Shown here: positions 1-64,000 of the stretch, in pieces
Numbering within the stretch: position 1 is the stretch's first letter
Layout: each line of letters opens with the position of its first letter
Virus record (IMG/VR): IMGVR_UViG_3300036853_000446
Span: 1 to 64,000 of that record
Reading direction: 5' to 3' (one strand)
Length of the DNA: 64,000 nt
Notes under the pieces: model-generated
What the model was told of the DNA's origin: nothing
Seen by the model: the letters and a program-made list of their open reading frames with translations, nothing else
The model's database searches: none
Position numbers and translations under genes: made by a program

Positions 1-1031
1 GCGGCCGAGAAAACATGATCGAAGCTCAGGTCAATCGCCCGTGTCCAAAAGAGCGGCGATCCTGTTGGAAACGTCTGAGCGGAATTGTCGACGACGACAA
101 GTGAGCCCGCCGCGACGACAGGTGCCTCCAAGCCCTTGCGTACCCAACGGCTCGGCGCAGCCTCCGGAAGCGTCGTGGCCTCGTAGAAAACCGCTTCCTC
201 GTGTAGGGCGCGGCGCGCCGCGGGAAACGCGATCCGGTGAGTTGGCGTATTGAACAAAAGTTTGGTCGGGTCATTGAAGACCGCCGTATAGGCCCGCTCG
301 TACGCTCGGTATTTCAGGTCCCGAAAGAGCGGCTGCTCCAGCGTTGCGCTGAGATCGCCCGGGTCGTAGCTCCCCGGCGTGATCAGCACGTTATTGTACC
401 GATAATGATGACCCGACGGCGATGGCCCGCCCGGGTCTCGATTCCAAGCGTTGAATCGAAACTCGGTTGAATTGAGCCGACGGATCTCGACCCGCGGATT
501 GTCGAGCCACGAGTAATCGACCTCTACATCTCCCGTGGGAACTGGGTTGTTGGGTAGGACGATTTGCCCCCTGAGTCCGACGACCGCGACGGGGACCACG
601 GGCACGCCACCGACACGCACGACGACGTCGGCCGGGTCGTCCGCAATCTGGCCCGTCCGTGGATCGAAGAGCTGCCAATCGATGGTGCCACTATTCGCAT
701 CTGGCAAAATAAACCGTGCGCGGACCTTGACCTCGTTGATACTGATGATCGAGAGCACCTCGTAAACGCTGTCGTTTGAGACGCTGCCCGTCAGTCGAAG
801 CCTCTTGCCTATATCGCTCAAGGTCAAGGCTGCCCCGGGCAATGTGACGCACTCGTAAGTATCGAGCGATCCCGCCGTGCCCGCCTGCAGCGTGAGGGGA
901 GGCTTGGCTATCGGACCCCTGTCGGTGAATATGCTCTGGCTCGCGAGCGCCGAGACGCCCTCGACGAAATCAGAGTCCTCGGCTCCGCCGAAACCGCCCC
1001 TGCCGTATTTACCCCCGCCGAAGCCCGCCAC
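1..1031 (-). CDS. Partial (3' end beyond window start) putative virion/baseplate structural protein, >343 aa
   Basis: Not in the ORF track because it has no stop in the window. Manual translation from GTG at 1031 (GAGGT SD-like upstream) is open to base 1: MAGFGGGKYGRGGFGGAEDSDF...TLPGAALTLSDIGKRLRLTGS...RAYERAYTAVFNDP... Confidence 0.75.
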   Translation of the reverse strand, partial: MAGFGGGKYGRGGFGGAEDSDFVEGVSALASQSIFTDRGPIAKPPLTLQAGTAGSLDTYECVTLPGAALTLSDIGKRLRLTGSVSNDSVYEVLSIISINEVKVRARFILPDANSGTIDWQLFDPRTGQIADDPADVVVRVGGVPVVPVAVVGLRGQIVLPNNPVPTGDVEVDYSWLDNPRVEIRRLNSTEFRFNAWNRDPGGPSPSGHHYRYNNVLITPGSYDPGDLSATLEQPLFRDLKYRAYERAYTAVFNDPTKLLFNTPTHRIAFPAARRALHEEAVFYEATTLPEAAPSRWVRKGLEAPVVAAGSLVVVDNSAQTFPTGSPLFWTRAIDLSFDHVFSA

Positions 1032-1130
1032 TTATGGACCTCGTCTCATCTTGCCCGCGTCCTCGGGACCCTCGGTCGCACTTATGCCTTGGGTGAAGTC
1101 GTCAAGCACCAGGGTGTCGAGGTTGGTCAT
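1032..1130 (-). CDS. Possible 32-aa mini-ORF (MTNLDTLVLDDFTQGISATEGPEDAGKMRRGP)
   Basis: ATG 3 nt after the upstream TGA; its TAA abuts the next GTG; shares GPEDAGK with the upstream 517-aa protein. Confidence 0.35.
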   Translation of the reverse strand: MTNLDTLVLDDFTQGISATEGPEDAGKMRRGP

Positions 1131-1133
1131 GTG

Positions 1134-2687
1134 TCAGCGATTGTCGGCGACGAGCCCGAGCGCAGCGAGGGCGGCAACGAGTGAATCGATCTGATCCTGG
1201 AGGTCCACGCCCGTGATGGACTGGCGCGGGACGGGTGGACCGTCGTCGCCCAAGAAACGGATCGTCGCAGTCGTGTCCCCGTCCGCGCCCATCAGCAGAT
1301 TGGTAACAAAGCTGCCGAGCGGGCCATTGCCCTCGGTGCTGAACCGATGCCCGCCGTTCAACGGAACGCCTTCAGTCGTGGTGCTGCGCTCTTGTTGGTA
1401 GAGTCCGCCGCCCTCACATTGGATGTTCGTGGTCCCGAGCGCGCTCGAAACGAGGAAGGTAGAGGCTCCGCTCATCGATAGGAAGCCGGTTCCTTCGCCC
1501 AATGCTTGGATGTCTATGCCTCCCAGCGAGCGCAGAATGATATTGCTTGCCGTGCCGAGCGTGGCCAGTTCGATCACGGAATTGTTGGCCGTGGTGTGAA
1601 GAACTAGATGCGACTCATCGCCTTCGCCCGCACTCTCTATCAGGTTGACCTTTAGCGCCTCCTCGAGTGTGAGCCCGAGCCAAGCGGTGCCGTCAAACGT
1701 GAGGGGCTGCCCGATGTATGAGCCCGGCGCGAGCGTGGTGCCGCCGCCCCCGCCGACAACGTCCTCCGCTGCGACATATTCGATGTTGTCCCCCGCGGTA
1801 TTGACGCGCGCGAGCTTGCCTGCGTCCTCGGGCCCCTGGGGCGTGCTGAGTTCCGCCGAAGTCGCCGTTGTCGCTCGAGAGAGCACGATCCAGGTATTAC
1901 CCCCTTGGTGGGCCACCATGAGGCTTGCACCGCCTCGTAGCTCAACCGTCGGCTCGCTTCCGATGAATCCTCCACCCGCTGGCATCACCGTTGCCAGGTT
2001 TTCATCCGACCCCAGAGCTGCAATCCGCACTACGAAGCCCGAACGAGGCGCATCAGGCAATAGGAACTCCGCGGAGCCTCCGATCGTCGGGAGGTCCACC
2101 ACGTGCAAGGGTGCATCGGTGACCCCTGCTTGGAAAGGAGTCGTATCGACGACCTGAAACGGTAAGTCTGAGTACGTCCGGAGGAACTCATCGATTTGCC
2201 CGGCGTTTCCGTTCCCAGCCCAGCCGCGGACGTTGTCCCGGTAGTTCTGCTCGTCCGGCTTCACCGGCCGAGGACCGTCTGAGATGATCGCCAGGGCGAT
2301 CAGTGGCAACGGTGGCGGGTTTCCCTGGAACGGTGGAAGCACAAAACCGCGGGCGTTTGGTATCCCAAAACACCTGATGTCCCGGTCCACGTGACCTGAG
2401 ACGTCGCTGACCTCGAGCATCACGCGGTATGTCCCCGCCACATCCGGAATGAAGTCCGCCGTAGGACTTCCGTCCACCGCTTGAGCGATAATTTGAGGCG
2501 AACCTGCCGGGGGAAAGGTTGCGCTGTCCGAAGGTGCGTCGAGCATGTAGAGCCTCCAACTGACGACGCCCGTGTCATTGCCGTTCGAGATGGTGACCTT
2601 TGAGAAATCACCGTGAACTCCGAACACAGCCTTTCCAGCCGCGTCAGTGTTGGCGCCCTGAACGAACTGAATGAGAGCTGTAGCCAT
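1134..2687 (-). CDS. Putative tail fibre/virion appendage protein, 517 aa
   Basis: Beta-rich, Gly/Thr-rich; fibre-like motif GQPLTFDGTAWLG; AGGGG SD-like sequence upstream; lies downstream of the wedge genes. Confidence 0.5.
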   Translation of the reverse strand: MATALIQFVQGANTDAAGKAVFGVHGDFSKVTISNGNDTGVVSWRLYMLDAPSDSATFPPAGSPQIIAQAVDGSPTADFIPDVAGTYRVMLEVSDVSGHVDRDIRCFGIPNARGFVLPPFQGNPPPLPLIALAIISDGPRPVKPDEQNYRDNVRGWAGNGNAGQIDEFLRTYSDLPFQVVDTTPFQAGVTDAPLHVVDLPTIGGSAEFLLPDAPRSGFVVRIAALGSDENLATVMPAGGGFIGSEPTVELRGGASLMVAHQGGNTWIVLSRATTATSAELSTPQGPEDAGKLARVNTAGDNIEYVAAEDVVGGGGGTTLAPGSYIGQPLTFDGTAWLGLTLEEALKVNLIESAGEGDESHLVLHTTANNSVIELATLGTASNIILRSLGGIDIQALGEGTGFLSMSGASTFLVSSALGTTNIQCEGGGLYQQERSTTTEGVPLNGGHRFSTEGNGPLGSFVTNLLMGADGDTTATIRFLGDDGPPVPRQSITGVDLQDQIDSLVAALAALGLVADNR

Positions 2688-2701
2688 CGCGCGATCCCCT
2701 T

Positions 2702-2818
2702 TCAGGTGACGCTTCGCGCCTCGCCGTAGCCATACGGCCTGTCGTCACGAACTTCCAATGTGGCGGTGTGCATAATTTTTGAGGGCATGCGGAGTTCTCT
2801 GTCACTTAGGCCCGGCAT
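2702..2818 (-). CDS. Possible 38-aa mini-ORF (MPGLSDRELRMPSKIMHTATLEVRDDRPYGYGEARSVT)
   Basis: ATG overlaps the upstream stop as TGATG at 2816-2820 and fills the intergenic gap. Confidence 0.3.
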   Translation of the reverse strand: MPGLSDRELRMPSKIMHTATLEVRDDRPYGYGEARSVT

Positions 2819-3660
2819 CAAAGGACTAGATGTGACCGGATGTTACCGTGCGCCTCCCCGACCACCGCCTGATTCTCCTTCTTGCCCAGGCGATCGATGT
2901 CCCGGAGACCCGCCCAGTAGCTCCGGAAGTCCTCGTAGAAGTAGCTCTGCAGCTTCCACCGCATCTCGTCGAAAATGTGACCAAGGGTGTCGTCCGTGTG
3001 ATTCGGGTCGTTCGGGTCATAGACGTCCGTGAAGATGAACCGGATCTGAAAGATCGTGTGCGCCGGACGGATGATGTCCAGAATGACCCGAATGGACGAT
3101 TGCAGGTCGAAGATGCCCTGGGGAAACTTGTTGTGCGTGGCAATATCGATCTGGAACCCGAACTGATCCGAGATGTCCAAGCCCGCTGATCCCTGTCGAA
3201 TCAGCAGAAAGTTCTCGAGGACTCTAAAGTCAGTCTTCAGAAACAGCCCGACGGCGTCCTTGATCGCTGAGGGAACCGACCCCTGGAAATAGACTCGGAT
3301 CAGATTGAGGAGGAACTGCCGAAACTCATCGTCGTCGAATTCCAGGCTCGGCAACCTGTTATTGAGGAAACAGAGGTAGCCAACGACGCCATAGAGAAAC
3401 TCGCTCCGCGTCCGGGTGAAATCGACGTCTGAGCTGACGTCCTCGAGCGCCAGCTCGATCTTGGCCAACTCGACGGCGACCGCTTTGCATTCGACGGTGT
3501 AGTGCGGGCCCTGCACCGTCGACGTGTAGTTCGACGGCAACAGTCGAAGCAATGTCGAGAAGATCGCCTGCGCGCGCTGAAGTATCCTGAGGTTGTATTC
3601 TTTCCCGCGCCGCTCGACGCTAAAGTTTAGCCGGGAAGAATCGATGATGAAGCGCGCCAT
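2818..3660 (-). CDS. Putative baseplate wedge subunit (P2 gpI / T4 gp7-like), 280 aa
   Basis: Directly follows the J-like gene with a TGATG overlap; LLRLLPSNY near the N-terminus and ILDIIRPAHTIFQIRF near the C-terminus resemble the gpI-type LL-P-(S/G) and KPAH motifs. Confidence 0.6.
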   Translation of the reverse strand: MARFIIDSSRLNFSVERRGKEYNLRILQRAQAIFSTLLRLLPSNYTSTVQGPHYTVECKAVAVELAKIELALEDVSSDVDFTRTRSEFLYGVVGYLCFLNNRLPSLEFDDDEFRQFLLNLIRVYFQGSVPSAIKDAVGLFLKTDFRVLENFLLIRQGSAGLDISDQFGFQIDIATHNKFPQGIFDLQSSIRVILDIIRPAHTIFQIRFIFTDVYDPNDPNHTDDTLGHIFDEMRWKLQSYFYEDFRSYWAGLRDIDRLGKKENQAVVGEAHGNIRSHLVL

Positions 3661-6600
3661 CAGGCTGCCTCCACCGCTTTTATCGTGAGCGTGAAGTTGC
3701 CCAAGTCGATAAACTCGACTTGCGTCGGTACAATGTCGTGTGGGCCACGATCACCCCGGATCACGTAGCTGGCGGCGTAGCGGTGTTGATCGGGATTGTC
3801 GACAGGGCTTCCCGCGCCGCTCAAGGAGACCACGATATGGTTCGCCGTGAGGCGCAACCGCTCGGCAGCGATGTCGTCGGCGTCCGTGAAGCCGTCGGCG
3901 ATCAGAGTCGCGTCGTCCGAGAACCCCGCGATCGAAGCGCCGTCCCGACCGATAATATAAGCCTGCCCAGCTGCCGCGCCGACGTTTAACAGCGACGCAG
4001 CCAGGGTCAGTGGTTCATCGTCCTCGAAGACCCCCTTATGCTCCGTGAGTAGCCCTCCCCCGTCGGTCGTTGGATAGTTCAAAGGGTTTGAGAGAATGAA
4101 TACGACGCTGCTGCCAATGTCGAGCGAGGACAACCGGCTATTCGTCGAGAGGAGCGTGACCCTCAACTTTCTCGAACCGTCCGCGTAGCCCATTCGCGCA
4201 AGCGGCAACACCTGGAAATCAACGCCCTCTGTCGAATCGATCGCGTTGATCATATCCGATTGCGCGGTGCCCTGACCGATCAACTTCGAATTGAGTTCGA
4301 TGGAGACATTGGTCCGGATCGCCGGGTCAGCGGAGTCTTTCGAAGCGCCCTGCTTGAGCTGTACCGTCGTATCGACGACGACCGAGTTCTGGACCGCTTG
4401 TTTGACGATCACATCCGCGGTCACATGGCGACGCGCATCGACCTTTTGTTGGAGTTGCTGCAGGAGGTCGTTGATGACGTAGGTCACCGTAAAGTTCTCA
4501 TCATGTTGATAGTCGACGAGGACCGTTTCACCGCTCGAGATTCGGGAGGCGTTGGTCCGCACGATCTTGACCGGTGTCGTTGCCGTCCCCGCGACGATCT
4601 CATAGTCGGGCGCAACACTCCCTACCCTTACCAACTCCGCAGCCGCCGTCGGCCCGAAATACTCCACCAGTCGGTCCTGGCTGAACATCTTCAAGGTCGC
4701 CGTGTTGATGCCGACGTTTCTCAGGGGCTCCTCGAAGAAGCCGATGAGAATATGACTCTCGGCCGTCACCGGGATCGCGTCGCCGGTCGGAATTCCGCCC
4801 ACCTGGTTGATGACCAGAAAGTCCTTGGCGATGGTGCTCTCGCCGGTGAGCAGTGGGTCGTCGGTCTTGTAAAGATTGAAGCCATCGTCGAGGTCGAGGG
4901 GCCCCGACGATTGACCGGCAACGGAGACAACGCGACGAACCGGCTGAAGCGAGAACGTGAAGCGGTTGATGCTCCGGAAGCGGTAATCGGCGGTGATGAT
5001 ATCGTTGATGTGTGTCGAGGGCTGCACGACGGACGCATTGAGCCGGAAGGTCTCAAAATCGATGATGATGACGCCGGTCAGATCAAAGTTGCTGCCCGTG
5101 GTTGCGTTCCGAACGCCTAACCCTTCGGCAAGATCGTCGAGAATCTCGCCCACCGGCGTGCCCACGGTGACCCGCGCGTCGAGCACCCGGAAGGTGAGCG
5201 TCGCGAGGTCGACAATCTCGCAGCGAATGTCGCGGGCAACCTGGAACGAGAAGGCGAATTTCTCCGCCACTGTCCGCTCGCGGAGGCCCTGCACCCAGAT
5301 GTCGACTTTGCCACCGATGTGCTTCTTCCGCAGCTCGTCGTAGTCCCGCATCATGAGCGGGTCACCACTCTTGACGATCTTGCTCTTTACGATACCGATG
5401 CTCTCTGCCGCCGTCGCGGCGTACCCCCCTTCAGTGCCGGCATCGACGCCAACGAAGCCGAGTTGCGCTCGAGTTGCCAGATCGGCATTGCTCTCGCGCA
5501 GCGTTCCGAATCTCGTTGCCTCTCGATTGACGACCTGCAAGCCCGACACTCCAGAGACGAGGTTCTTGATCTGGCCCGCGGAGCGGTTGCCATTGGTCCC
5601 GATGAACTCGGCGGTGACGTCGACGGTGATCTCGTACTGCTGAGTATCGAAATTGAAGAATGCGTCAGCGGCGTCTGCCGTCATCACGAATGTGCCACCG
5701 ACGACATACCGGACCGCGGGCAATCCGTTATCGGAATCGGCGTCCGTGGAGACAACGGAGCCGGAAGGGATGATGACGTCGCGCCTCGGTCGCGTGCCGC
5801 TGAAATAAACCACCTGCCCTACCGCCGGGCGACCCGGAAGCCGCGTCTTGTTGTAGTTCCCCGCGATCTTGTCGAACTGGGTATCGATCAGGCTTTGGAC
5901 CGACGGATCGGATTGAAGACCCAGGGCAGCCTTCAGCGCCTGCTTGTACGAGTTGCCTGCCACGGAATCAGAAACGCCGTCACCATTGGCGTCGTCGATC
6001 TGAAGGAGGGTCAGGAAACTCCCGCTCCGGTGCACGAAATCGATGATGAACCAGACACGCTCGACCTCCGAGGCGAATGGATCAATGCTGACGTCCCGCG
6101 ACGTGGATCCCGGGATGAGGCTGATCTCCTGGTCAAGTCTTTGGATCGCCGAAACGTAGTCTCGTACGACCTCGATCTGGGTCCGACCTGGCAAGTCTCG
6201 GATTGTCGTATCGATGACGAGCGGTGAACCGAGCACCTCTTGCGAGTGCGGCGTCTCAAATTCGAGATTTTGCGCCCGGTCGAAGAAGATGGCCGTTATC
6301 GTATAGTAGAGAGGCTCGGCCCCATCCACGTCCACGAACTGGTCAGAGTTGATGATCCCGTCCGCCTCAGTTCCGCTCCGGACATGGGTGAACCCGACAA
6401 AGTCCTCGAGTTCATACGCCGACAGAGACCCGTTGAACCTCATGTCAGTGAAGACACCCGAGACGTCGACGGTCGTATCGGACACCGTGCTCAACACTTG
6501 CCCAAACTCGTCTTCCAGCGTGACGACGGTGCGCGCGATGTTGCCTTGCGGGGTAAAGACGGCTTGTGACGAGACGATCTCCGTGATGTCCTCCTCTTGT

Positions 6601-7139
6601 GTCGTCACTTCGCTGATGGGGCTTGCGTTGATTCGGAAGCGCCCTGATGACCCGCCGGGACTCGTGCTCGCGTAGAAATTGAAACCGCGGAACACCAGCG
6701 GGTCGGTGAACCCGGGGTTGTCCGTTGGCAGGCGGCTCGACACGAGCAGGGTGACCGAGCCCCGCCTCCGTCGAACACGGATCCCTGTGGGGATGACGGC
6801 GTCCGATTGGGTCGACGATTGGACCCTCGTGATCTGCGCCGTCGAGGACGGGCTAACGCCTCCCACGATGTCGATCGCGCGGAGCAGAATCGTGTTCTGT
6901 CCGAAATCCAGATCCAGGCCGTCAGGGAAGGAGGCAAGATTCGGAATCGCGAATGCCGGACCGTCCAACCGGATCATGGCCGAGTCGGAAACGAACGGAC
7001 CACCGTTGATCGACACCTGAATGTCGATGGTATTTGCCGCAGCAAGGCCCGACAAGAAGACCGCCCTCTGGTTCGTCGAGAGGGTCAGACTCGTCGCGCG
7101 TGAGCCATCGGGGGCATCGATCTGCGGGGCACTCGCCAT
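3660..7139 (-). CDS. Baseplate J-like (T4 gp6-like) wedge protein, ~1159 aa, with long N-terminal and internal extensions
   Basis: J-family motifs: IPGSTSRDV, RLPGRPAVGQVVYF, IPSGSVVST, AEFIGTNGN, G-x-x-x-ESNADLATR, GTEGGY. Alternative TTG start at 7145. Confidence 0.85.
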   Translation of the reverse strand: MASAPQIDAPDGSRATSLTLSTNQRAVFLSGLAAANTIDIQVSINGGPFVSDSAMIRLDGPAFAIPNLASFPDGLDLDFGQNTILLRAIDIVGGVSPSSTAQITRVQSSTQSDAVIPTGIRVRRRRGSVTLLVSSRLPTDNPGFTDPLVFRGFNFYASTSPGGSSGRFRINASPISEVTTQEEDITEIVSSQAVFTPQGNIARTVVTLEDEFGQVLSTVSDTTVDVSGVFTDMRFNGSLSAYELEDFVGFTHVRSGTEADGIINSDQFVDVDGAEPLYYTITAIFFDRAQNLEFETPHSQEVLGSPLVIDTTIRDLPGRTQIEVVRDYVSAIQRLDQEISLIPGSTSRDVSIDPFASEVERVWFIIDFVHRSGSFLTLLQIDDANGDGVSDSVAGNSYKQALKAALGLQSDPSVQSLIDTQFDKIAGNYNKTRLPGRPAVGQVVYFSGTRPRRDVIIPSGSVVSTDADSDNGLPAVRYVVGGTFVMTADAADAFFNFDTQQYEITVDVTAEFIGTNGNRSAGQIKNLVSGVSGLQVVNREATRFGTLRESNADLATRAQLGFVGVDAGTEGGYAATAAESIGIVKSKIVKSGDPLMMRDYDELRKKHIGGKVDIWVQGLRERTVAEKFAFSFQVARDIRCEIVDLATLTFRVLDARVTVGTPVGEILDDLAEGLGVRNATTGSNFDLTGVIIIDFETFRLNASVVQPSTHINDIITADYRFRSINRFTFSLQPVRRVVSVAGQSSGPLDLDDGFNLYKTDDPLLTGESTIAKDFLVINQVGGIPTGDAIPVTAESHILIGFFEEPLRNVGINTATLKMFSQDRLVEYFGPTAAAELVRVGSVAPDYEIVAGTATTPVKIVRTNASRISSGETVLVDYQHDENFTVTYVINDLLQQLQQKVDARRHVTADVIVKQAVQNSVVVDTTVQLKQGASKDSADPAIRTNVSIELNSKLIGQGTAQSDMINAIDSTEGVDFQVLPLARMGYADGSRKLRVTLLSTNSRLSSLDIGSSVVFILSNPLNYPTTDGGGLLTEHKGVFEDDEPLTLAASLLNVGAAAGQAYIIGRDGASIAGFSDDATLIADGFTDADDIAAERLRLTANHIVVSLSGAGSPVDNPDQHRYAASYVIRGDRGPHDIVPTQVEFIDLGNFTLTIKAVEAA

Positions 7140-7175
7140 ATACAAGGCAGCGCGAAAAAGAGAATACTTAGTGCT

Positions 7176-8339
7176 CTACCGGCCGAGGGCGGGGACATCG
7201 TTTTGCCTCCGCAATGAATCCTGAACGGAAGAGCCCAGAAGATCGATGGGGAGCGGTAGCTGGAGGCCGCGCGAGATCTGAATGGGGGAACTCGACCGAT
7301 TTTGCACGAAAGCGTTGACATAGACCACGGTCGGATTGACAGGGTCCTGCTCGAGATTCACGACGAGCAGGCGGAAGGGGTATTCCTCGTCCGAGACGAA
7401 TTGCACCCGGTCCTCCTGCTCACTCTTGATCGCCTGCCATCGGCGGAACGCCTCCTGCAGGTCGCTGAGAATCAGATTCTGCATCAGCCCGTGGTCGGAA
7501 ATCTTCTTCCCGATGGCCTCGAGCAGCCCCGTCCCATACCACGGATGAAAGGGGTTACTGCCCTTCTCCGTATAGGTGATCTTGAGCACTTCCTGGCTGA
7601 GCAGCTCGGCGTTGCGCACCTTGATGACGTTACCGGCCGCTGTATATTGCCAATCGTTCTCGATGCCGACGCCGCCACAGCGCCGGCACTCTTGCCGCAC
7701 CGTCGTGTAGTTGATCTCGACGAAATCTGTCGCGCTCTCGATGCGGCGGTCGAAGACGATCAGCCGGGTTGGTCTGTCGCTGAGTGTGTTTGGATCGTTG
7801 ATGAGGGACCACGGCGGGAAGACCTCTTGCCCGCGGTATACGCGACCCACGGTGAAGCCCAGCGTCCGAGCGAGGCTGCCCGTCGGGACGCCCGATTCCG
7901 AATGCGGTAACGCCTTGAAGACGATCCGGGCAGACGGCCCCCGGGTCGCCGTGAGCGCTTGAACCTGGAGCCGTCGCGACACCCTAAAGACCAGCCCGAC
8001 CACGGCTGAAGACAGCGCCTTCGTCAAGGCCTTCGCCGTGATACCTAGACCCGTCGGAGCTACGAAGTTCTGGTCAGGACCGCCGTTGACACTGACGATG
8101 AGGCGGTCATTCACGCCGGCTCGAATGTCAAAAGGTCCGGGACTCGAGCCTTTGGCCACTGCCGGAATCAAATGTCCGACGGACGTGATCTCCTGCTCTC
8201 CGTTGAATCGCACGCGAACCGAGGCCGCACTCGCAATGGGTCGGAGGGGGCGGACCGTCCTTCGGTCGGCGTTTAGAAAGAGCGCCTCCTCCACGACCAG
8301 ATGGGGGCAGACCTGCTCGATTCTTCGATCGTAGCTCAT
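7176..8339 (-). CDS. Baseplate wedge gp25/GPW-like protein with N-terminal extra domain, 387 aa
   Basis: C-terminal KGSNPFHPWYGTGLLEAIGK is typical of gp25/GPW (GxxPFxPxYGxxL); sits immediately upstream of the J-like gene; contains CRRCGGVG. Confidence 0.75.
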   Translation of the reverse strand: MSYDRRIEQVCPHLVVEEALFLNADRRTVRPLRPIASAASVRVRFNGEQEITSVGHLIPAVAKGSSPGPFDIRAGVNDRLIVSVNGGPDQNFVAPTGLGITAKALTKALSSAVVGLVFRVSRRLQVQALTATRGPSARIVFKALPHSESGVPTGSLARTLGFTVGRVYRGQEVFPPWSLINDPNTLSDRPTRLIVFDRRIESATDFVEINYTTVRQECRRCGGVGIENDWQYTAAGNVIKVRNAELLSQEVLKITYTEKGSNPFHPWYGTGLLEAIGKKISDHGLMQNLILSDLQEAFRRWQAIKSEQEDRVQFVSDEEYPFRLLVVNLEQDPVNPTVVYVNAFVQNRSSSPIQISRGLQLPLPIDLLGSSVQDSLRRQNDVPALGR

Positions 8340-9106: not shown

Positions 9107-9135
9107 CTCAAACCGCCTTTTGGATCCTGCTCACA

Positions 9136-11272: not shown

Positions 11273-11413
11273 TCAACTTCCGTACTTGAGCTTCTCTAGT
11301 TTCCTGCGCTCGCTCTCGAGCTGTTGCCCCGTCGCCTTGATTGCCAACCTGAGGACGTCTGCCGTACGCCGTTGGATTCCGAGCTGTTTGGCGTAACGCC
11401 AGCCAGGCTTCAA
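11273..11413 (-). CDS. Small hypothetical protein, 46 aa (MKPGWRYAKQ...KLEKLKYGS)
   Basis: TTG start overlaps the upstream stop as TTGA (11410-11413). This is the coding-like tail of track ORF 11273..12115, whose 5' part overlaps the 2149-aa gene. Confidence 0.55.
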   Translation of the reverse strand: MKPGWRYAKQLGIQRRTADVLRLAIKATGQQLESERRKLEKLKYGS

Positions 11414-18419: not shown

Positions 18420-22250
<3,831 letters not shown>

Positions 22251-37309: not shown

Positions 37310-37315
37310 GAGGGG

Positions 37316-41147: not shown

Positions 41148-41148
41148 T

Positions 41149-52194: not shown

Positions 52195-52214
52195 CTTTTA
52201 GCCGATTCCTTCGC

Positions 52215-52514: not shown

Positions 52515-52558
52515 TAGTTGCTCCCTTCACGTTTCATGCCCTTTATTTCATGCCTCAA

Positions 52559-54772: not shown

Positions 54773-54794
54773 CTTGAGTCATACGGCGTTCAAA

Positions 54795-56695: not shown

Positions 56696-58048
56696 TCAGT
56701 AGGTCAGATTCTCCCAGGTCTTCGTACGCCCGCGGAGTTCCCGCTCGTTCGGGATATTCGGTTTCGACGTCTCGACGACCGGCGACAGGCCGGGTGGCAA
56801 CACCTGCTCGACGGTGAGCCCCTGCAAGTTGTCGATGGGAAGCCTGTACCGGATGTCCTTCTCGTCGATGTAGCCGATGTTGAAATGCTGTTGAAGAATC
56901 ATCCCGCGGTTCGTCGGCATGCGCACCGGCCCTATCGAGTACCGCTCTCCGTTGATGCGAACGATGAAATCCCGTTGGCTCAAGAGAGGCGCTGGCCCCG
57001 TCCAAACGTCCATGACGTGCTCCAGGTTTCGCCCTCGCGCCGTTTGGTTGATGCGGCGCTCGGCGTCGTCAGGAGCGAACACGATCGCGTAAGGCCCCTC
57101 GTAGCCCCGCAGAATTCCTGTCCCATAACAGTCGGGGCAGTCATTGAGTGGCTGCTTGTGCGTCTCGTATCGCACGCACGAGCACGGCTCGCCCACGGTC
57201 TTCCGGATGTAAACCAGACCGCGTTCGCCCCCCTGTTGCAAGATCCATTGGTTACGACGGACCGCCTCGCGCCAGATCCAGTCGACCTTCTCGATCTCTT
57301 TGGAATTCGTCATGGCCGCCCGCTCGAGCGGCGTCTCGCGAATCTCTTCGACTCGAATCACGTCAAGGTCCGCCCGTATGGGCACCCCAACCGTGGTCAC
57401 GCGGTAGAAGACCCGCGTGCTCAGGTCCGTTCGAACGAGGGTGTTGTTGTACCGATAGCTGACTCGGACAACGGTCGACTCCGCGGGGACCGGCGACGGG
57501 ATCATCTTCTGAGTCGCCACGTCCGGAAACTGGCGCGTTTCGATCTCGATTTCACCCGTCTCGCCGACGACCCTCTTGATGTGCGCGGGCTCCCCATCGA
57601 TGGTGACCCGCACCTCGGCAATGTTCGCCTCCGCAAACGCCTGTGAACCTGCGATGACGATCGGCGATCGCAGCGTCCGGAACACGTAGCGAGGGGGATT
57701 CGTCTCGCTGCCCGCGGCTTCTCCCCGCAAGACCCATTGCGAGTCTTCCACCACTTCGTCGACCACGATGACGTTGTCCGTGCGGTCGCGGTAGAAGCGC
57801 GCGCCGACGGGCAGCTCAGTCAGACGGTAGTAGGGGCCAAACTCGCTGTCGAAGCTCTGGTAGACATTGACCCCCAAGATGACGAACCTCGAATTCGCCG
57901 TCAAAGACGCCGGGTCATCCCAACAGAGGTCGAAAATCCCTGGCTGGTACCCGCTCGTCAGGAACAGGTTCAACGGCGGCACGGGGTACGCCGGGTTTTC
58001 CAGCTCTAGGTCGTGGGGGCTTCGATCCCGTTGCGAGGCGTATGGCAC
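56696..58048 (-). CDS. Putative head-closure/neck protein with FN3-like N-terminus and Zn finger, 450 aa
   Basis: GEPCSC...NDCPDCYGTG; C-terminal DFIVRINGERYSIGPV resembles head-closure beta-barrels. Confidence 0.5.
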   Translation of the reverse strand: MPYASQRDRSPHDLELENPAYPVPPLNLFLTSGYQPGIFDLCWDDPASLTANSRFVILGVNVYQSFDSEFGPYYRLTELPVGARFYRDRTDNVIVVDEVVEDSQWVLRGEAAGSETNPPRYVFRTLRSPIVIAGSQAFAEANIAEVRVTIDGEPAHIKRVVGETGEIEIETRQFPDVATQKMIPSPVPAESTVVRVSYRYNNTLVRTDLSTRVFYRVTTVGVPIRADLDVIRVEEIRETPLERAAMTNSKEIEKVDWIWREAVRRNQWILQQGGERGLVYIRKTVGEPCSCVRYETHKQPLNDCPDCYGTGILRGYEGPYAIVFAPDDAERRINQTARGRNLEHVMDVWTGPAPLLSQRDFIVRINGERYSIGPVRMPTNRGMILQQHFNIGYIDEKDIRYRLPIDNLQGLTVEQVLPPGLSPVVETSKPNIPNERELRGRTKTWENLTY

Positions 58049-58553: not shown

Positions 58554-59798
58554 TCATCCCACCAGCTTACACCAATTTGCCACACAGCTGACGATGGCAG
58601 CAGGGTCCCGTACAAATTCTGATTCCCAGATCACTAGACACTCAATTCCAACCTCCAAAAATGCGTCGATGACCTCTTGCTCGTGCTCCCAGATATCTTT
58701 CCCTGTAAATGCCTCCGAATGCCAGTAGTCGCCGAAGACTTCCACTACCTTCCTAATACCCCGATTGGCTAGCACGACTTCTGGCCCCGGCAGAACGAAG
58801 TCAGGGTTCTTGTGACATTTCAGCTTAGGAAGCCATACCCAATAGCTTCCATCACCGGTATATAGAAGCTGCGTCAAACACTCGGCGAAACGACGTTCCA
58901 GCCCGTTTGGACCCGGACGCCTGAAGTCCTTCCAAGCCGCTCGTGCCACCTCTGCATTTTGCATGGCATATGGGACACCGTATCGCGCAATCGAAGTCTT
59001 CTTAGCCTTATCATGAATGACTGGATTCTGCAGCGGGTGAGTCACCCCGTAACGCACCAAACACGTCTGCTCTCGACGTTGCTGCACCTGCAGGTTTTGA
59101 AGGGGACTACAAACGCCATATACCTTCAAACAGGTCGTGCGCATCTTGTCGACAATTTCAGCAGAAGCTGACGGCGCGGGACCGCCAAATCGTAAGATGC
59201 ACGTTGCCCTTCTCTTACTAATAGCACCCGGGATTGCACCCGTAGCTTCCACTCCGTACCTAAGTAAGCACGTTCCTCTCAGCCGGACACGGATCTCTTC
59301 CGATTGCAACGGGCTCGACACACCGTAGTTGATTTTTAGCGTGGCTACCTGACGTGCCTTTGTCTCCGATACTCGCATCGGATTTGCATCTCCTTTAGGG
59401 AATCTTCCTCGTTTCGGAGCGCGCTTCCTTTCAATGCTCTCGTACAATGGTGACTCCTTACAGAAGACATTTTCAACGCCATACTTCGTTTTTAGAGTCA
59501 ACTTACGCCGCTCTTCCAATCCCGGAATTTTTCGAAAAGATTCAGTGCCGTACCGCTCTAAGAGCGTTGCTTTCTGCCGAACACTCTGGACATCCCTACT
59601 GCGCGATAGCCATACCGAGCAACACTTGTGATGGCTCGCCATCCGACTTTCGTTAATAGCCGCGAACCCACACAGGCAATCCCTTGGGGTCAAATCCCCG
59701 AGAACAAGCTTCCAACCGCTACAGACGGCTTTGTGGCGTGAGTTTATACTGTCGGAGTTTGGGAAGTGCTTTCGACAGTGTGGACAGGTAACCGGCAT
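58554..59798 (-). mobile_element. Free-standing homing-endonuclease-like gene (Zn fingers + KxTxLxRYG repeats + Vsr/DUF559-like PD-(D/E)xK nuclease), 414 aa
   Basis: N-terminal CPHC/CLCG; about 7 repeats such as KATLLERYG, KLTLKTKYG, RGTCLLRYG, EQTCLVRYG; C-terminal NPDFVL...VVEVFGDYWH...IWESE; GC about 47% in a counted 60-nt sample, well below the flanks. Confidence 0.8.
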
Positions 59799-59815: not shown

Positions 59816-60700
59816 TCATCCCATGAACTTCTGTGGTGTGAGGACACCTCGGCCGCTATAGGGTCCAAAGGAACTACGGATCCCAATTCCGAAGCGGGGC
59901 TGTTGTAAACCCTTGATTACACGGACAGTTTGTTTGGCTTTCTCGAGTTGGCCTTCGAAGAGATCTTTGAAATTGTTGGCGGCGGCCTCGTACTTGCTCG
60001 ACTTGTCCAGATTGAGACTCACGCCACCAATCGAATAATCGAACTCTTCGGAAATCCAGTTGATCATGAGAGCAAGCAGCGCGTAGTTTGCAGCGCCCGT
60101 CAGCAGCAGCGTTCGCCACTCGGGCTTCCATTGACTCATGACGCTCATGTTCTGAAACGGCGTCCGAGGTGGCGATGCGATGACCGCGTCGAGCGCACGC
60201 TCCAGGAACTCTTTCAGCTCGACATCCTCCCAGATGTAGCCGAACACGCGGTTGAACTGGCTGACGGTCTCCTCGTGCGCAGGAGGCCTAAACCTATAAT
60301 TTCTATCAGGATTTGAATCTCTGAGCATGATCCTGAGTCGACGCACGAGGTCAGCCTCGCAATCGTTCATGTTCAAGCTCATGACCGTCTTGTCGATGAC
60401 CTCGAACTCCTGGATGGCCTGATGGACGGGCCCGCCAACGGTCTCGCGGAACGTCCAGCGAGCCCGATAGACCCCGATGTTGGCGTCGAGCGGGATGATG
60501 ATGCTCGCGTAATACTTGCCAACCTCCGGGCTCGCCGGTGAGCGCCGCGGCGCGCCCAAGAGAACCTCCCGCCCCGTCGTGAAGTCGTAGAGGGTGTAGT
60601 AGACCTCGGCCGCATTCGAGGGCGTCCCCGAACTGTTTTCCAAGAAGATGTTGAGGTCCTCTGGACCTAGCTGCTGACCTTTAAAGAATGCGACAGACAT
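59816..60700 (-). CDS. Putative head-tail adaptor (neck) protein, 294 aa
   Basis: LVRRLRIMLRD...WEDVELKEFL...LLLTGA...FDYSIGGVSLNL pattern resembles gp15/gp6-type adaptors. Confidence 0.55.
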   Translation of the reverse strand: MSVAFFKGQQLGPEDLNIFLENSSGTPSNAAEVYYTLYDFTTGREVLLGAPRRSPASPEVGKYYASIIIPLDANIGVYRARWTFRETVGGPVHQAIQEFEVIDKTVMSLNMNDCEADLVRRLRIMLRDSNPDRNYRFRPPAHEETVSQFNRVFGYIWEDVELKEFLERALDAVIASPPRTPFQNMSVMSQWKPEWRTLLLTGAANYALLALMINWISEEFDYSIGGVSLNLDKSSKYEAAANNFKDLFEGQLEKAKQTVRVIKGLQQPRFGIGIRSSFGPYSGRGVLTPQKFMG

Positions 60701-61744: not shown

Positions 61745-62128
61745 TCAGGATTCGGACAAAATGAGCTGATTTGCGGGCACTCGAAGCTGGTCGCCTATCG
61801 CGATCGTGCGCGGCGCGGACAGGGCCGTGTGGTAGAGGAGATTCCCCGACGCGGGCGCGTCAAAGATTCCGAAATGAACGACGGTGCCCCAGGAAGCCGT
61901 AGCCATCGGGAACAGGACGTCTCCAACGTTTGCCACTTGATTCGCCGCGGGAGATCCGAGCGTCAGGGTCTGCCTCGTATACGCTCCGCCCGAGACTTCG
62001 GCGCCACCGCCAGCGTTCGTAGGCGCCGTCGTATACGCAGCGAGGTAAACTGCTGCCGGGGCGGCGAACGAAGTAGCTCTCAACACGTGGTTGAGTAGAT
62101 TGACCGCTAGGTAGTCGGACTTTGCCAT
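61745..62128 (-). CDS. Conserved small phage virion/fibre-associated protein, 127 aa
   Basis: SDYLAVNLLNHVL...VYLAAYTTAP...EVSGGAYTRQ...FPMATASWGTVVHFGIFDA..SGNLL is a widespread phage structural pattern. Confidence 0.75.
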   Translation of the reverse strand: MAKSDYLAVNLLNHVLRATSFAAPAAVYLAAYTTAPTNAGGGAEVSGGAYTRQTLTLGSPAANQVANVGDVLFPMATASWGTVVHFGIFDAPASGNLLYHTALSAPRTIAIGDQLRVPANQLILSES

Positions 62129-62850: not shown

Positions 62851-62902
62851 ATGGGGTCTCGTCTTCAGAGGACTTCATCTTCGGTCTGGGGCTGATTTTT
62901 CA

Positions 62903-62932
62903 GGGTCTGGGTCTGGGTCTGAATCTGGATCT
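62903..62932 (-). repeat. Five tandem AGAYYC hexamers
   Basis: Minus strand AGATCC AGATTC AGACCC AGACCC AGACCC. Confidence 0.9.
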
Positions 62933-62959
62933 AAAATCGAGGGGCTGGCGAAACCCCTC
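62933..62959 (-). terminator. Possible terminator hairpin after the last gene
   Basis: GAGGGG-TTTCGCCAG-CCCCTC followed by GATTTT. Confidence 0.5.
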
Positions 62960-62967
62960 CCAAGGCT

Positions 62968-64000
62968 TTACGAAAGCGCGACAGCGTTCGACACGCGATG
63001 CCGGACTTGGACCCGCACGCTGGTCGTGGACACGGCGACACCGGGAATGAGTGCCGCGGGGATCACGATGGCGGTCGGAAGGACGCTCCCGCCAGCTCTG
63101 ATGATCGCTTGCTGTTCCAACCGCGCGGCACCCACCCCGGTGAATTTGACGACGATGCCATAATCCCCCGTCCCGCCCCCGCTCTCGGTGCCGAGGCCAG
63201 TGCCGCTGAGCGTTACCATCCCCTCTGCAGGTGTCCCGCGAACCCCGGTCGCAATCGTTGGCAGGGTGTTCGCCGTGGCAAATGGCGTAGACCCATCGTC
63301 CTCGAAAACCGCCACAGCCGCCCCGGTGGGCACCGATGGCCGGCGCGGGTCCGGGTCATAAGTCGCGCCGCTGTATTTGGCGATATTGCCGACGAGAAAG
63401 CTTTCGACGGCTACGTCGGTGTCCGCGAGCAGAGGCGCCACGGCATCGGCCACCACGAATGCACGAGCGTCGCCCGCGTCGTAGAACGGCTCGAGCGCCC
63501 TCGCGTTGGTCGTGTCGCCAACGGCCTCCAGTTGCGCCTGGCCGATGGTGAGGGGGCCATTCGGGAGGCCCACTGAGGCGTAGAAGGCCGAAGCGGCAGG
63601 AAAGGTCCGCACACCATCGGTGAGATTTAGGTTGGCATTGGCCGTCGACCCATTGCCGGTGGTGTCGAGTTCGAGGAAGCTACTCGAGCCGTGCGTCCGA
63701 GACTCGAGCGACACGGCCGAGCCCGCTTTGAAAGCGCGGATGCCAGAGCTTCCGAAGGCCGTATTGATGGCAGCCACGAGCGCCTCAGTCGAGGCGTAGG
63801 CTGCCTCGCCAATCGTATAGACGCCGAACGAGGCCGTCGACGACGTCCTCAGGCGGAGCACCTTGTTGGCAGCCCCAATCGTGAGACTCGTCGGGGCGGC
63901 AGAGCCCGTGACCGTTGCGCCCACGCCCGTGCTCGAGTCCGCCAATGCCGCCGCGAGGAAAGCGACGGTGGGAGGCCCCAGGTATCTCTCTTGGCCAGGC
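62968..64000 (-). CDS. Partial (5' end beyond window) putative virion structural protein, >343 aa
   Basis: Frame stays open upstream of track start 63945 to the window edge (PGQERYLGPPTVAFLAAAL...); carries a domain like the sheath insertions; C-terminal IPT/Ig-like segment. Confidence 0.7.
   Translation of the reverse strand, partial: PGQERYLGPPTVAFLAAALADSSTGVGATVTGSAAPTSLTIGAANKVLRLRTSSTASFGVYTIGEAAYASTEALVAAINTAFGSSGIRAFKAGSAVSLESRTHGSSSFLELDTTGNGSTANANLNLTDGVRTFPAASAFYASVGLPNGPLTIGQAQLEAVGDTTNARALEPFYDAGDARAFVVADAVAPLLADTDVAVESFLVGNIAKYSGATYDPDPRRPSVPTGAAVAVFEDDGSTPFATANTLPTIATGVRGTPAEGMVTLSGTGLGTESGGGTGDYGIVVKFTGVGAARLEQQAIIRAGGSVLPTAIVIPAALIPGVAVSTTSVRVQVRHRVSNAVALS

What the first reader, a model, noticed from the sequence alone, without database searches (positions are those of the whole stretch)
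1..64000. Supersized contractile-tail module of a probable jumbo phage
Seen: about 50 co-oriented genes in myophage/CIS order with greatly enlarged components: sheath 1533 aa, J-like ~1159 aa, hub 1176 aa, gp25-like 387 aa, plus a 2149-aa protein. Established T4 sizes: gp18 659, gp6 660, gp27 391, gp25 132 aa. Inference: a heavily decorated tail of a GC-rich jumbo phage lineage, with a tail of roughly 170 nm (1145-aa tape measure x ~0.15 nm). Neck-like genes and the absence of an Afp15-type AAA+ ATPase favour a phage over a headless injection system.
Basis: partly seen in the sequence, partly recalled or inferred. Interest (0 to 1): 0.6.

Follow-up and report, generated by a model that had tools for sequence, protein, structure and literature searches.

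The report
Oversized tail genes of a 407-kb phage
The window holds the neck, contractile-tail and baseplate genes of a closed ~407-kb uncultured "huge" phage whose sheath protein (1,533 aa) carries about 1,050 extra residues; it is a real and extreme, but not isolated, example of the known rule that tail parts grow with phage genome size.

Summary
All ~45 genes in the window lie on the minus strand, and the stated sizes are correct: sheath 1533 aa, J-like 1161, hub 1176, gp25-like 387, tape measure 1145, and a 2149-aa protein.

- **Identities.** The sheath and J-like calls rest on sequence homology. The hub call rests on a confident fold (Mu gp44 / T4 gp27 / VgrG type). The gp25-like call rests on weak but concordant hits. 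The tube (247 aa) rests only on transitive homology to the phage G tube candidates.
- **Phage, not a headless system.** The window is bases 1-64000 of a 407,634-bp virus contig whose ends overlap by 139 nt. Terminase, portal, prohead protease and major capsid genes follow on the same strand at 85-101 kb.
- **Relatives.** The lineage is large and uncultured: at least 476 sheath homologs of 1400-1550 aa, on contigs up to 529 kb. Its distant cultured relatives are Tunturiibacter phage Tunturi 5 and Bacillus phage G.
- **Corrections.** Four genes in the block are not tail parts: a UvrD helicase, a volactin-type actin, a Dps-like protein and a homing endonuclease. The tail module also continues across the contig junction.
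- **New detail.** The sheath insertion is built from repeated modules, and one of these also occurs in the gp25-like protein.

The parts
46457..51058 (-). Tail sheath, 1533 aa (1528 aa by the public gene call). The conserved N- and C-terminal core is split by a ~1,050-aa insertion. The insertion holds module A (76-157, 255-340) and module B (165-260, 802-897, 900-994).
   Evidence: tblastn to annotated sheaths of Tunturi_5 (35% identity), phage G gp178 and cluster-C mycobacteriophages. Core alignment to G gp178. At least 476 homologs of 1400-1550 aa. Internal repeats by hhalign and hmmsearch. No Pfam sheath hit.
38542..39285 (-). Probable tail tube protein, 247 aa.
   Evidence: 42-45% identical to Tunturi_5 gp329, a virion structural protein. 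blastp to phage G gp180 (56 bits) and gp179 (31 bits); PMC8570332 names these two as the tube candidates (HHpred >95%). It is among the best-conserved genes of the block, median 64% identity in 32 loci. The AF2 model failed (pLDDT 33), so the fold is untested.
36050..38434 (-). Two genes (372 aa and 419 aa) between tube and tape measure, in the position of tail assembly chaperones.
   Evidence: Position only. No family hits. Conserved in 23-27 related loci. Tunturi_5 has an annotated chaperone in the same place.
32609..36046 (-). Tape measure protein, 1145 aa.
   Evidence: Ala/Gly/Leu/Lys-rich, pI 9.3, with a Gly-rich hydrophobic stretch near residue 250. Sits between the chaperone position and the lysozyme/hub genes, as does the 1106-aa TMP of Tunturi_5. 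No family or homology hit, so this is inferred.
31968..32609 (-). 213-aa baseplate-proximal structural protein.
   Evidence: tblastn to Tunturi_5 gp255, a virion structural protein, E 4e-7.
30177..31964 (-). Tail-associated lysozyme, 595 aa.
   Evidence: Pfam Phage_lysozyme E 1.2e-36 at residues 162-289. phrog_7 endolysin E 3.9e-50.
26645..30175 (-). Baseplate hub, 1176 aa. The hub fold occupies residues ~1-500; a conserved middle region and a coiled-coil-like C-terminus follow.
   Evidence: AF2 on a 60-sequence alignment gave pLDDT 85.5 and pTM 0.83. Foldseek top hits are MuSo2 43-kDa tail protein (E 3e-18), Mu gp44, CIS hubs, VgrG and T4 gp27. Profile and tblastn hits to Tunturi_5 gp254. 1,114 representative homologs.
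24474..26648 (-). Central spike, 724 aa, with a gp5-like C-terminal beta-helix.
   Evidence: phrog_694 'baseplate hub and tail lysozyme', E 1.8e-8, residues 506-684 against the C-terminal end of the profile. tblastn to Tunturi_5 gp253.
22272..24446 (-). Three small genes (263, 198 and 190 aa). The first two are fibre-like or decoration-like.
   Evidence: 263 aa: phrog_2647 E 7e-59 plus many tail-fibre PHROGs. 198 aa: a short collagen-like stretch and fibre PHROGs. 190 aa: no hits.
18420..22250 (-). Collagen-like tail fibre, 1276 aa.
   Evidence: Pfam Collagen E 3.9e-92 in 7 stretches. phrog_6320 tail fibre E 2e-154.
11410..17859 (-). Conserved giant protein of the baseplate block, 2149 aa, role unknown.
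   Evidence: No Pfam, PHROG or Atlas hit. Conserved at 40-48% identity as 1950-2090-aa frames in 5 of 5 large relatives.
8336..11268 (-). Two unassigned genes (710 aa and 256 aa) just upstream of the gp25-like gene.
   Evidence: No significant family hits. Assigned to the module by position only.
7176..8339 (-). gp25/gpW-like sheath initiator, 387 aa, with an N-terminal copy of sheath module B (residues 55-142).
   Evidence: Pfam Sheath_initiator E 0.003 at residues 228-312; phrog_43 and phrog_120 baseplate wedge at E ~7e-4 on the same region. Two homologs are named 'phage baseplate assembly protein W' by JGI. Module B: hhalign 97.7%, E 1e-12, with reciprocal hmmsearch.
3660..7145 (-). Baseplate J / gp6-like wedge protein, 1161 aa.
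   Evidence: Pfam Baseplate_J E 2e-10, above the curated cut-off. phrog_6 baseplate wedge subunit E 7.9e-21.
1..3660 (-). Distal genes: 280 aa, 517 aa, and the first 343 residues of a 1328-aa protein that runs across the contig junction.
   Evidence: No family hits. The junction-spanning ORF is intact. It contains a weak module-A match at residues 127-173.
51712..53677 (-). Genes just upstream of the sheath: a 372-aa tail-terminator-like protein and a 160-aa zinc-ribbon protein, with a small unassigned ORF (~99 aa) between them.
   Evidence: 372 aa: homologous to Tunturi_5 gp324 'tail terminator' and to phage G gp177, the gene just before G's sheath. 160 aa: Zn_ribbon_8 and Tunturi_5 gp325.
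56696..58048 (-). 450-aa neck or tail protein.
   Evidence: Homologous to Tunturi_5 gp322 'minor tail protein' (E 2e-33) and phage G gp175.
59816..60700 (-). 294-aa head-tail connector.
   Evidence: 29% identical over 290 aa to Tunturi_5 gp319 'head-tail connector protein'. Median 65% identity in 38 related loci.
61745..62128 (-). 127-aa Gp80-family virion fibre protein.
   Evidence: Pfam PF23140 (podophage GP4 fiber I protein gp80) E 1.9e-43.
43004..46291 (-). UvrD-type helicase, 1095 aa. Not a tail part, but embedded in the block directly after the sheath.
   Evidence: Pfam UvrD-helicase E 4e-49 and UvrD_C. phrog_1967 E 2e-74. Same position in relatives L024 and L025; hits in 48 loci.
53735..55490 (-). 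Volactin-family actin-like protein (345 aa) and Dps/ferritin-like DNA-binding protein (231 aa). Neither is a recognisable tail part.
   Evidence: Volactin PF25216 E 3.6e-69, full length. Dps-like: phrog_3636 E 4e-8, with sub-threshold Ferritin/DUF5856 hits. Conserved in 63 and 51 related loci respectively.
58554..59798 (-). Homing endonuclease, 414 aa, in a low-GC patch. Probably a mobile insertion.
   Evidence: phrog_3339 E 9e-27. GC is 54.6% in 58-60 kb. Found in only 9 related loci.

Best explanation
The window is the neck, tail, baseplate and fibre gene block of a complete or nearly complete ~407.5-kb uncultured huge myophage.

Expression and gene order. The genes lie in one orientation, from 64000 towards 1. 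Downstream of the head genes (terminase, portal, protease and capsid, at 101-85 kb) the order is:
- connector and neck proteins
- a tail-terminator-like protein
- the sheath
- the tube candidate
- two chaperone-position genes
- a 1145-aa tape measure
- a lysozyme-domain protein
- a gp27/gp44-fold hub extended to 1176 aa
- a beta-helix spike
- fibre genes, one of them collagen-like
- a conserved 2149-aa protein
- a gp25-like sheath initiator
- a J/gp6-like wedge protein
- more fibre genes across the contig junction

Mechanism, inferred from the established contractile-tail paradigm. The hub, spike and wedge proteins form the baseplate. The tape measure sets a tube length of about 170 nm. The sheath polymerises on the gp25-like initiator through its conserved N- and C-terminal core. 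Contraction then drives the tube and spike through the envelope, with the lysozyme domain cutting peptidoglycan.

What is unusual is size. About 1,050 residues per sheath subunit lie outside the core. They are built from duplicated ~80-90-aa modules, and one of these modules is also present on the sheath initiator. The outer surface of the tail is therefore probably covered from the baseplate upward by an extra layer of the same domains. I infer that this layer serves stabilisation and/or adhesion.
For: Shown by tools:
- Genome size, virus classification and closure.
- Head and packaging genes.
- Sheath homology and insertion map.
- Abundance and length conservation of the sheath family.
- Repeated modules, and module sharing with the gp25-like protein.
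- Hub fold.
- J-like, lysozyme, spike and collagen fibre.
- gp25-like, weak but concordant.
- Synteny with the Tunturi_5 tail block of chaperone, TMP, lytic protein, hub and fibres.
- 30 tRNA genes.

From papers:
- Tunturi 5 is a myovirus with a contractile 167-nm tail (PMC11924767).
- Phage G gp179 and gp180 are the tube candidates (PMC8570332).
- Sheath size and domain number scale with genome size, with extra domains placed between the N- and C-terminal core (PMC9230969).
Against: - The tube assignment is transitive only, because the model failed.
- The tape measure has no homology support.
- gp25-like hits are below the curated thresholds.
- The fold of the sheath insertion is unknown. The protein exceeds the 1200-aa folding limit, and PDB profile searches gave nothing significant.
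- IMG/VR labels the contig 'linear', and CheckV estimates 86% completeness.
- There is no virion proteomics or imaging for this phage, and the host is unknown.
- The function of the outer domains is pure inference.
Confidence: 0.88

Rival explanations
1. A headless, domesticated contractile injection system or tailocin locus in a bacterial chromosome or megaplasmid.
For: The sheath, hub, gp25-like and J-like set is shared with eCIS and tailocins, and Foldseek hits for the hub include Anabaena, Algoriphagus, Streptomyces and PVC/Afp baseplates.
Against: Terminase, portal, prohead protease and capsid genes lie on the same strand within 40 kb. The contig is a closed 407-kb virus record with 30 tRNAs. 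No AAA+ ATPase lies in the block. Cultured relatives are bona fide myoviruses.
Confidence: 0.02
2. The 1533-aa ORF is not one functional sheath. It is a gene fusion or assembly artefact that joins a sheath to a fibre or decoration gene.
For: No Pfam sheath domain is detected. The middle 1,000 residues resemble no known sheath.
Against: At least 476 independent homologs keep the same length and architecture on separate contigs, and 132 are in IMG/VR. The sheath core is split, with the N-terminus at residues 9-99 and the C-terminus at 1154-1529; that is the normal topology for inserted domains (PMC9230969) and is not what an end-to-end fusion would give. Tunturi_5, a cultured myovirus, has a 1204-aa homolog.
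Confidence: 0.03
3. The element is a very large phage-plasmid or provirus-like replicon rather than a strictly lytic huge phage. The tail module is the same, but the lifestyle differs.
For: One 529-kb relative is classed 'provirus' by IMG/VR. Four sheath homologs sit on contigs binned into bacterial MAGs. A phage-encoded actin-like protein could in principle act in plasmid-type segregation.
Against: I searched for no integrase or partition genes. The MAG taxa are mutually inconsistent (Lysinibacter, Methylobacter, Actinomycetota, unclassified), as expected for mis-binning. The junction ORF shows a closed or terminally redundant genome with no host flanks.
Confidence: 0.07

Closest known systems
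Tunturiibacter phage Tunturi 5 (PP885688; PMC11924767)
   Same: A jumbo myovirus of 309 kb and 58% GC, with many tRNAs. Homologous proteins are terminase (28% identity), portal, protease, MCP (49%), connector, terminator, sheath, tube candidate (42-45%), hub and spike. The block TMP, lytic protein, hub, fibres is in the same order. Its sheath is already enlarged (1204 aa), and its 1106-aa TMP goes with a measured 167-nm tail.
   Different: It is only a distant relative. Its sheath lacks about 330 residues of the insertion, since only residues 8-119, 265-555 and 1103-1530 align. It has no volactin gene. Its tail genes are split between two genome regions. Its genome is 100 kb smaller.
Bacillus phage G (NC_023719; PMC8570332)
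   Same: The MCP is 40% identical. The sheath core, tube candidates gp179/gp180, gp177 and gp175 are homologous and in the same local order.
   Different: Its sheath is only 579 aa, with a ~100-aa outer domain where this phage has ~1,050 aa. Its TMP is 2893 aa. It has no volactin gene. Its host is a Firmicute and its GC content is low (own knowledge).
Uncultured huge phage LR745208.1 (485 kb)
   Same: It is the closest deposited record: MCP 83% identical, terminase 45%, and sheath N-terminal 640 residues 38%.
   Different: It is unannotated, and only the N-terminal 41% of the sheath aligns. It is not the same subclade as the 1400-1550-aa sheath group found.
Multi-domain ('type 3') sheaths of large phages (PMC9230969)
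   Same: A conserved N- and C-terminal core with extra domains inserted between them. Size grows with genome size, and jumbo phages have five or more domains.
   Different: The longest of the 153 sheaths tabulated there is 1283 aa, from the metagenomic phage LacPavin_0818_WC45. This family reaches 1528-1552 aa. Its extra modules are not shown to be Ig-like, and one is shared with the sheath initiator.
Mu gp44 / T4 gp27 / VgrG baseplate hubs
   Same: The fold of residues ~20-500 matches at Foldseek E 3e-18 to 4e-11, probability 1.00.
   Different: Sequence identity is only 8-12%. About 680 further residues follow the hub fold. Spike and lysozyme are separate genes, whereas in T4 gp5 they are fused.

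Membership tests
Tailed dsDNA phage (Caudoviricetes) | Terminase large subunit | tested here: met
   99143-101152: phrog_2 E 2.5e-24. 28% identical to Tunturi_5 TerL and 45% to LR745208. Pfam Terminase_6N found nothing.
Tailed dsDNA phage (Caudoviricetes) | Portal protein and prohead protease | tested here: met
   Portal 93672-95525: phrog_16240 E 1.3e-24. Protease 88287-89876: phrog_18299 E 1.3e-9. Both have Tunturi_5 homologs.
Tailed dsDNA phage (Caudoviricetes) | HK97-type major capsid protein | tested here: met
   84874-85752 (292 aa) is 40% identical to phage G gp27 'major head protein' and 49% to the Tunturi_5 major head protein. The fold itself was not modelled.
Jumbo / huge phage (genome over 200 kb) | Genome length over 200 kb on a single phage replicon | tested here: met
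   407,634 bp in one contig, classed as a virus record. 139-nt end overlap with one mismatch, and an intact ORF across the junction. CheckV estimates 86% completeness.
Contractile tail (myovirus-type) | Sheath protein with a conserved N- and C-terminal core | tested here: met
   Homology to annotated sheaths. Core alignment to phage G gp178.
Contractile tail (myovirus-type) | Tube protein of the gp19/XkdM/Hcp fold | tested here: inconclusive
   The 247-aa protein is homologous to the phage G gp180/gp179 tube candidates. The AF2 model was unusable (pLDDT 33), and there were no PDB profile hits.
Contractile tail (myovirus-type) | gp27/gp44-fold baseplate hub | tested here: met
   Model pLDDT 85.5. 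Foldseek E 3e-18 to the MuSo2/Mu gp44 hub and E ~1e-11 to T4 gp27.
Contractile tail (myovirus-type) | gp25/gpW sheath initiator | tested here: inconclusive
   Sheath_initiator E 0.003 (17.9 bits against a cut-off of 32.9) and two PHROG wedge hits on the same residues. JGI names two homologs gpW. The PDB profile hit to the phi812 wedge subunit has E of only 0.7. The position directly upstream of J fits.
Contractile tail (myovirus-type) | Baseplate J / gp6 wedge protein | tested here: met
   Baseplate_J 40.9 bits against a cut-off of 21.1. phrog_6 E 7.9e-21.
Contractile tail (myovirus-type) | Contraction observed | not testable with these tools
   Observed only for the distant relative Tunturi 5 (PMC11924767).
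Extracellular CIS / tailocin (Afp, PVC, R-pyocin) | No capsid or packaging genes; host genes on both sides | tested here: not met
   Head and packaging genes are adjacent. The replicon is closed and viral.
Extracellular CIS / tailocin (Afp, PVC, R-pyocin) | Afp15-type AAA+ ATPase in the cluster | tested here: not met
   PF00004 matches lie only at 111, 366 and 371 kb, and none is in the window.
Volactin family (PF25216) - for the 345-aa gene only | Full-length match above Pfam's gathering score | tested here: met
   234 bits against a cut-off of 35, profile positions 3-321 of 321. Polymerisation and cellular role are not testable here.

The most novel reading that the evidence does not exclude
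The ~1,050-residue sheath insertion and the matching module on the gp25-like initiator assemble into a continuous second, outer layer around the contractile sheath: an 'exo-sheath' that starts at the baseplate. This layer is a clade-defining structure with its own function, such as host-surface or matrix adhesion, or mechanical locking of the extended state. Alongside it, the clade's late gene block has permanently recruited a volactin-type actin and a UvrD helicase. That would point to a phage-encoded actin cytoskeleton acting during virion assembly or genome handling, analogous in role to PhuZ tubulin of nucleus-forming jumbo phages.
Probability: 0.2. Interest if true: 0.65.

Novelty: new member of a known kind. 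Interest (0 to 1): 0.42.

Why it matters
It documents one extreme of contractile-tail evolution. This family of sheath proteins is about 250 residues longer than the longest in a published 153-protein survey, and it is conserved in hundreds of uncultured 300-530-kb phages. The hub, the initiator and the wedge protein are all enlarged in parallel.

Two aspects are open to direct test because a cultivable, if distant, relative exists (Tunturi 5 on Tunturiibacter). The first is the sharing of a decoration module between sheath and sheath initiator. The second is the conserved actin-like and UvrD genes inside the structural block.

Otherwise the finding fits the known rule that tail-protein size scales with genome size. 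It does not change how contractile tails are thought to work.

Tried and rejected
- **Pfam searches for sheath and terminase:** Phage_sheath_1 and Terminase_6N searches of the whole genome found nothing. The proteins are too divergent, and PHROGs or tblastn were needed instead.
- **Tube model:** AF2 on a 31-sequence alignment gave pLDDT 33.
- **PDB searches:** sequence and profile searches with the sheath, tube, hub, gp25-like protein and modules A and B gave nothing significant. The best leads only were Flagellin D (E 0.13) for module B, RcGTA distal tail protein (E 0.78) for module A, and the phi812 wedge subunit (E 0.7) for the gp25-like protein.
- **Hub family scans:** Pfam scans of 40 and 60 hub-family members gave only 5 weak YQBQ-like hits.
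- **Tape measure:** a single-protein scan of IMG/VR found nothing, and there was no match in Tunturi_5.
- **ESM Atlas:** only low-overlap leads for the hub and nothing for the 2149-aa protein. One search was a size slip, which I corrected.
- **Host assignment:** MAG contigs carrying the sheath gave four contigs in mutually inconsistent taxa, so I reject any host call.
- **Haloarchaeal origin:** I briefly considered it because of the volactin hit and 60% GC. I rejected it because the lysozyme, the bacterial-phage relatives and the Acidobacteriota-phage homology point to a bacterial host.
- **ORF 40732-41304:** I rejected it as a gene (GC3 0.49, no homologs).
- **Complex prediction:** not attempted, since no claim here rests on a specific protein pair.

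Full report
**1. What is in the window**

The window is bases 1-64000 of a single 407,634-bp contig (GC 60.5%) that the genome tool classes as an IMG/VR virus record, with CheckV completeness of 86%. Every credible gene in the window is on the minus strand, so transcription runs from 64000 towards 1. I count about 45 genes.

- 1533 aa at 46457-51058. The public gene call starts five codons later, giving 1528 aa.
- 1161 aa at 3660-7145.
- 1176 aa at 26645-30175.
- 387 aa at 7176-8339.
- 2149 aa at 11410-17859.
- 1145 aa at 32609-36046.

**2. Phage or headless system**

On the same strand, just beyond the window, lie four head and packaging genes:
- A large terminase at 99143-101152 (phrog_2, E 2.5e-24).
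- A portal at 93672-95525 (phrog_16240, E 1.3e-24).
- A prohead protease at 88287-89876.
- A 292-aa major capsid protein at 84874-85752. It is 83% identical to that of the uncultured 485-kb phage LR745208, 49% to Tunturiibacter phage Tunturi_5 and 40% to the Bacillus phage G major head protein gp27.

The first 139 nt of the contig recur at its very end with one mismatch, and a 1328-aa ORF reads through that junction without a stop. The assembly is therefore closed or terminally redundant at about 407.5 kb, although IMG/VR labels it 'linear'. Thirty tRNA genes cluster at 140-165 kb. No AAA+ domain lies in the window.

**3. The sheath**

Pfam sees no sheath domain. tblastn, however, matches the 1533-aa protein to several annotated tail sheaths: Tunturi_5 (gp326, 1204 aa), phage G (gp178, 579 aa) and about 200 cluster-C mycobacteriophages.

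Against phage G, only residues 9-99 and 1154-1529 align, to G residues 3-92 and 195-575. G's small outer domain occupies residues 120-218 (PMC8570332). This phage therefore has roughly 1,050 residues inserted at the usual site for sheath outer domains, which is the topology described for multi-domain sheaths (PMC9230969).

Profile-profile comparison of alignment segments shows that the insertion is partly built from repeats:
- Module A, about 80 aa, at 76-157 and 255-340 (hhalign 98.6%, E 8e-16).
- Module B, about 90 aa, at 165-260, 802-897 and 900-994.

I could not determine the fold of either module.

The family is large and length-conserved. At least 476 homologs of mostly 1400-1550 aa were found. 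IMG/VR holds 132, on contigs up to 529 kb, one of them with direct terminal repeats and 100% estimated completeness. In a published table of 153 sheaths the longest is 1283 aa.

**4. Other tail parts**

- **J-like protein.** Baseplate_J scores above Pfam's cut-off, and phrog_6 gives E 8e-21.
- **Hub.** No family scan recognised it. An exhaustive profile search showed that only the N-terminal ~500 residues are widely conserved, across 1,114 representatives. A 60-sequence alignment of that region folded with pLDDT 85.5 and pTM 0.83. Foldseek returned baseplate hubs throughout: MuSo2 43-kDa tail protein E 3e-18, Mu gp44, eCIS hubs, VgrG and T4 gp27. So the 'hub 1176 aa' call is right, with about 680 extra residues.
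- **Spike and lysozyme.** The next gene (724 aa) matches the C-terminal beta-helix part of the T4 gp5 PHROG. A separate 595-aa gene carries a phage lysozyme domain (E 1e-36).
- **gp25-like protein.** It has only sub-threshold hits, but they are concordant. Sheath_initiator, phrog_43 and phrog_120 all fall on residues ~228-312. Two homologs are named gpW by JGI. The gene also sits directly upstream of J. Its N-terminal residues 55-142 are a copy of sheath module B (hhalign 97.7%, E 1e-12, with reciprocal HMM hits).
- **Tube.** The 247-aa protein at 38542-39285 is the best candidate. It is 42-45% identical to a Tunturi_5 virion protein and homologous to phage G gp180 and gp179. The phage G tail paper names those two as the tube candidates, on HHpred evidence. 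My own model failed, so this remains an inference.
- **Tape measure.** The 1145-aa protein has typical composition and the right position, but no detectable homologs outside the clade.
- **Fibres and the giant protein.** A 1276-aa collagen-repeat protein and neighbouring small genes look like fibres. The 2149-aa protein has no recognisable domain but is conserved at 1950-2090 aa in all five large relatives tested.
- **Beyond the junction.** 897-aa and 1398-aa proteins share an N-terminus with a Tunturi_5 tail fibre, and a 604-aa protein hits a T4 gp34-like PHROG. The tail module therefore extends beyond the window to about 388.6 kb.

**5. Neck**

Four upstream genes have homologs in Tunturi_5, annotated as follows, and in part in phage G genes next to its sheath:
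- 294 aa: head-tail connector.
- 450 aa: 'minor tail protein'.
- 372 aa: tail terminator.
- 160 aa (a zinc-ribbon protein): hypothetical protein.

A 127-aa protein belongs to the Gp80 fibre family.

**6. Tail length**

Tunturi_5 has the same gene order of chaperone, tape measure, lytic protein, hub and fibres. Its annotated tape measure is 1106 aa and its measured tail is 167 nm, which gives 0.151 nm per residue. By the same ratio this phage's tail would be about 173 nm.

**7. What is not a tail gene**

Four genes in the block are not tail parts:
- A UvrD-type helicase (1095 aa) follows the sheath directly.
- A full-length volactin-family actin homolog lies between the terminator and the neck genes (Pfam, 234 bits).
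- A Dps-like protein lies beside it.
- A homing endonuclease sits in a low-GC patch.

The helicase and the actin homolog keep their positions in relatives whose sheaths are only ~60% identical. The actin homolog is present in three large relatives but absent from Tunturi_5 and phage G.

**8. Relatives, host and novelty**

The phage belongs to a broad lineage that includes phage G, Tunturi_5 and LR745208. Within that lineage it falls in a populous uncultured subclade of 300-530-kb genomes.

The host is unknown. Four sheath-bearing contigs binned into MAGs belong to inconsistent taxa. The only cultured relative infects Acidobacteriota, but at 27-49% identity in core proteins that is not a host call.

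The finding is a new, extreme member of a known kind. Enlargement of sheaths with genome size is already described. The points I did not find described in the papers read are:
- The 1.5-kaa size class.
- The module shared between sheath and initiator.
- The clade-conserved actin and UvrD genes in the structural block.

**9. Limits**

- No alternative genetic code was applied.
- Nothing resembling human sequence, or a toxin or effector of animals or crops, was encountered.

Noticed in passing
window 53735-54772 (-): A full-length volactin-family (PF25216) actin homolog: 234 bits against a cut-off of 35, with recognisable phosphate and adenosine motifs. It is conserved in 63 of 82 related loci and in three 437-529-kb relatives, but absent from Tunturi_5 and phage G. 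The volactin paper and a jumbo-phage genomics review that I searched do not mention phage actins of this family.
   Followed up: partly
window 43004-46291 (-): A 1095-aa UvrD-type helicase with a ~280-residue N-terminal extension sits directly downstream of the sheath gene. It keeps that position in relatives whose sheaths are only 60% identical (L024, L025). Why a repair-type helicase is fixed inside a late structural block is unexplained.
   Followed up: partly
window 7176-8339 (residues 55-142) and 46457-51058 (residues 165-260, 802-897, 900-994): The same ~90-aa module (motif PF.I..G.ND.L...VDG......L.AG...TA......IN) occurs in the gp25-like initiator and at least three times in the sheath. 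The weak, non-significant best PDB lead is an outer domain of 'Flagellin D' (E 0.13).
   Followed up: yes
window 58554-59798 (-): A 414-aa homing endonuclease in the lowest-GC patch of the window (54.6%). It is present in only 9 related loci, so it is probably a recent mobile insertion among the neck genes.
   Followed up: partly
window 40289-41312: About 1 kb between the 283-aa and 273-aa genes has no convincing gene (the ORFs there have poor GC3), apart from a possible 63-aa ORF conserved in 3 loci. The close relative L024 has only a 73-nt gap here. There are no Rfam hits in the window.
   Followed up: partly
window 1-139 and genome 407496-407634: The contig ends overlap by 139 nt with a single mismatch at position 127. 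That mismatch probably explains why IMG/VR classes the record as 'linear' rather than as having terminal repeats.
   Followed up: yes
genome 69873-75101 (-), L002:9873-15101: Another giant ORF (1742 aa, high second-position GC) lies between the neck genes and the head genes, just outside the window. It was not characterised.
   Followed up: no
genome 140248-164650 (-): Thirty tRNA genes, all on the minus strand, covering most amino acids.
   Followed up: partly
genome 388600-392796 and 397257-399950 (-), L020: Two large proteins (1398 aa and 897 aa) share a ~300-350-residue N-terminus that is homologous to the N-terminus of Tunturi_5 tail fibre gp247. They look like paralogous fibres with a common attachment domain and different distal parts.
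   Followed up: partly
relative IMGVR_UViG_3300035182_002586 (L097; 528,957 bp): This relative carries the same sheath, volactin and 2-kaa protein, yet IMG/VR labels it 'provirus' at 100% completeness. That label is odd for a 529-kb element and was not examined.
   Followed up: no
window 54795-55490 (-): A 231-aa Dps/ferritin-like DNA-binding protein (phrog_3636 E 4e-8; Pfam hits below cut-off) lies next to the actin homolog. It is conserved in 51 related loci.
   Followed up: no
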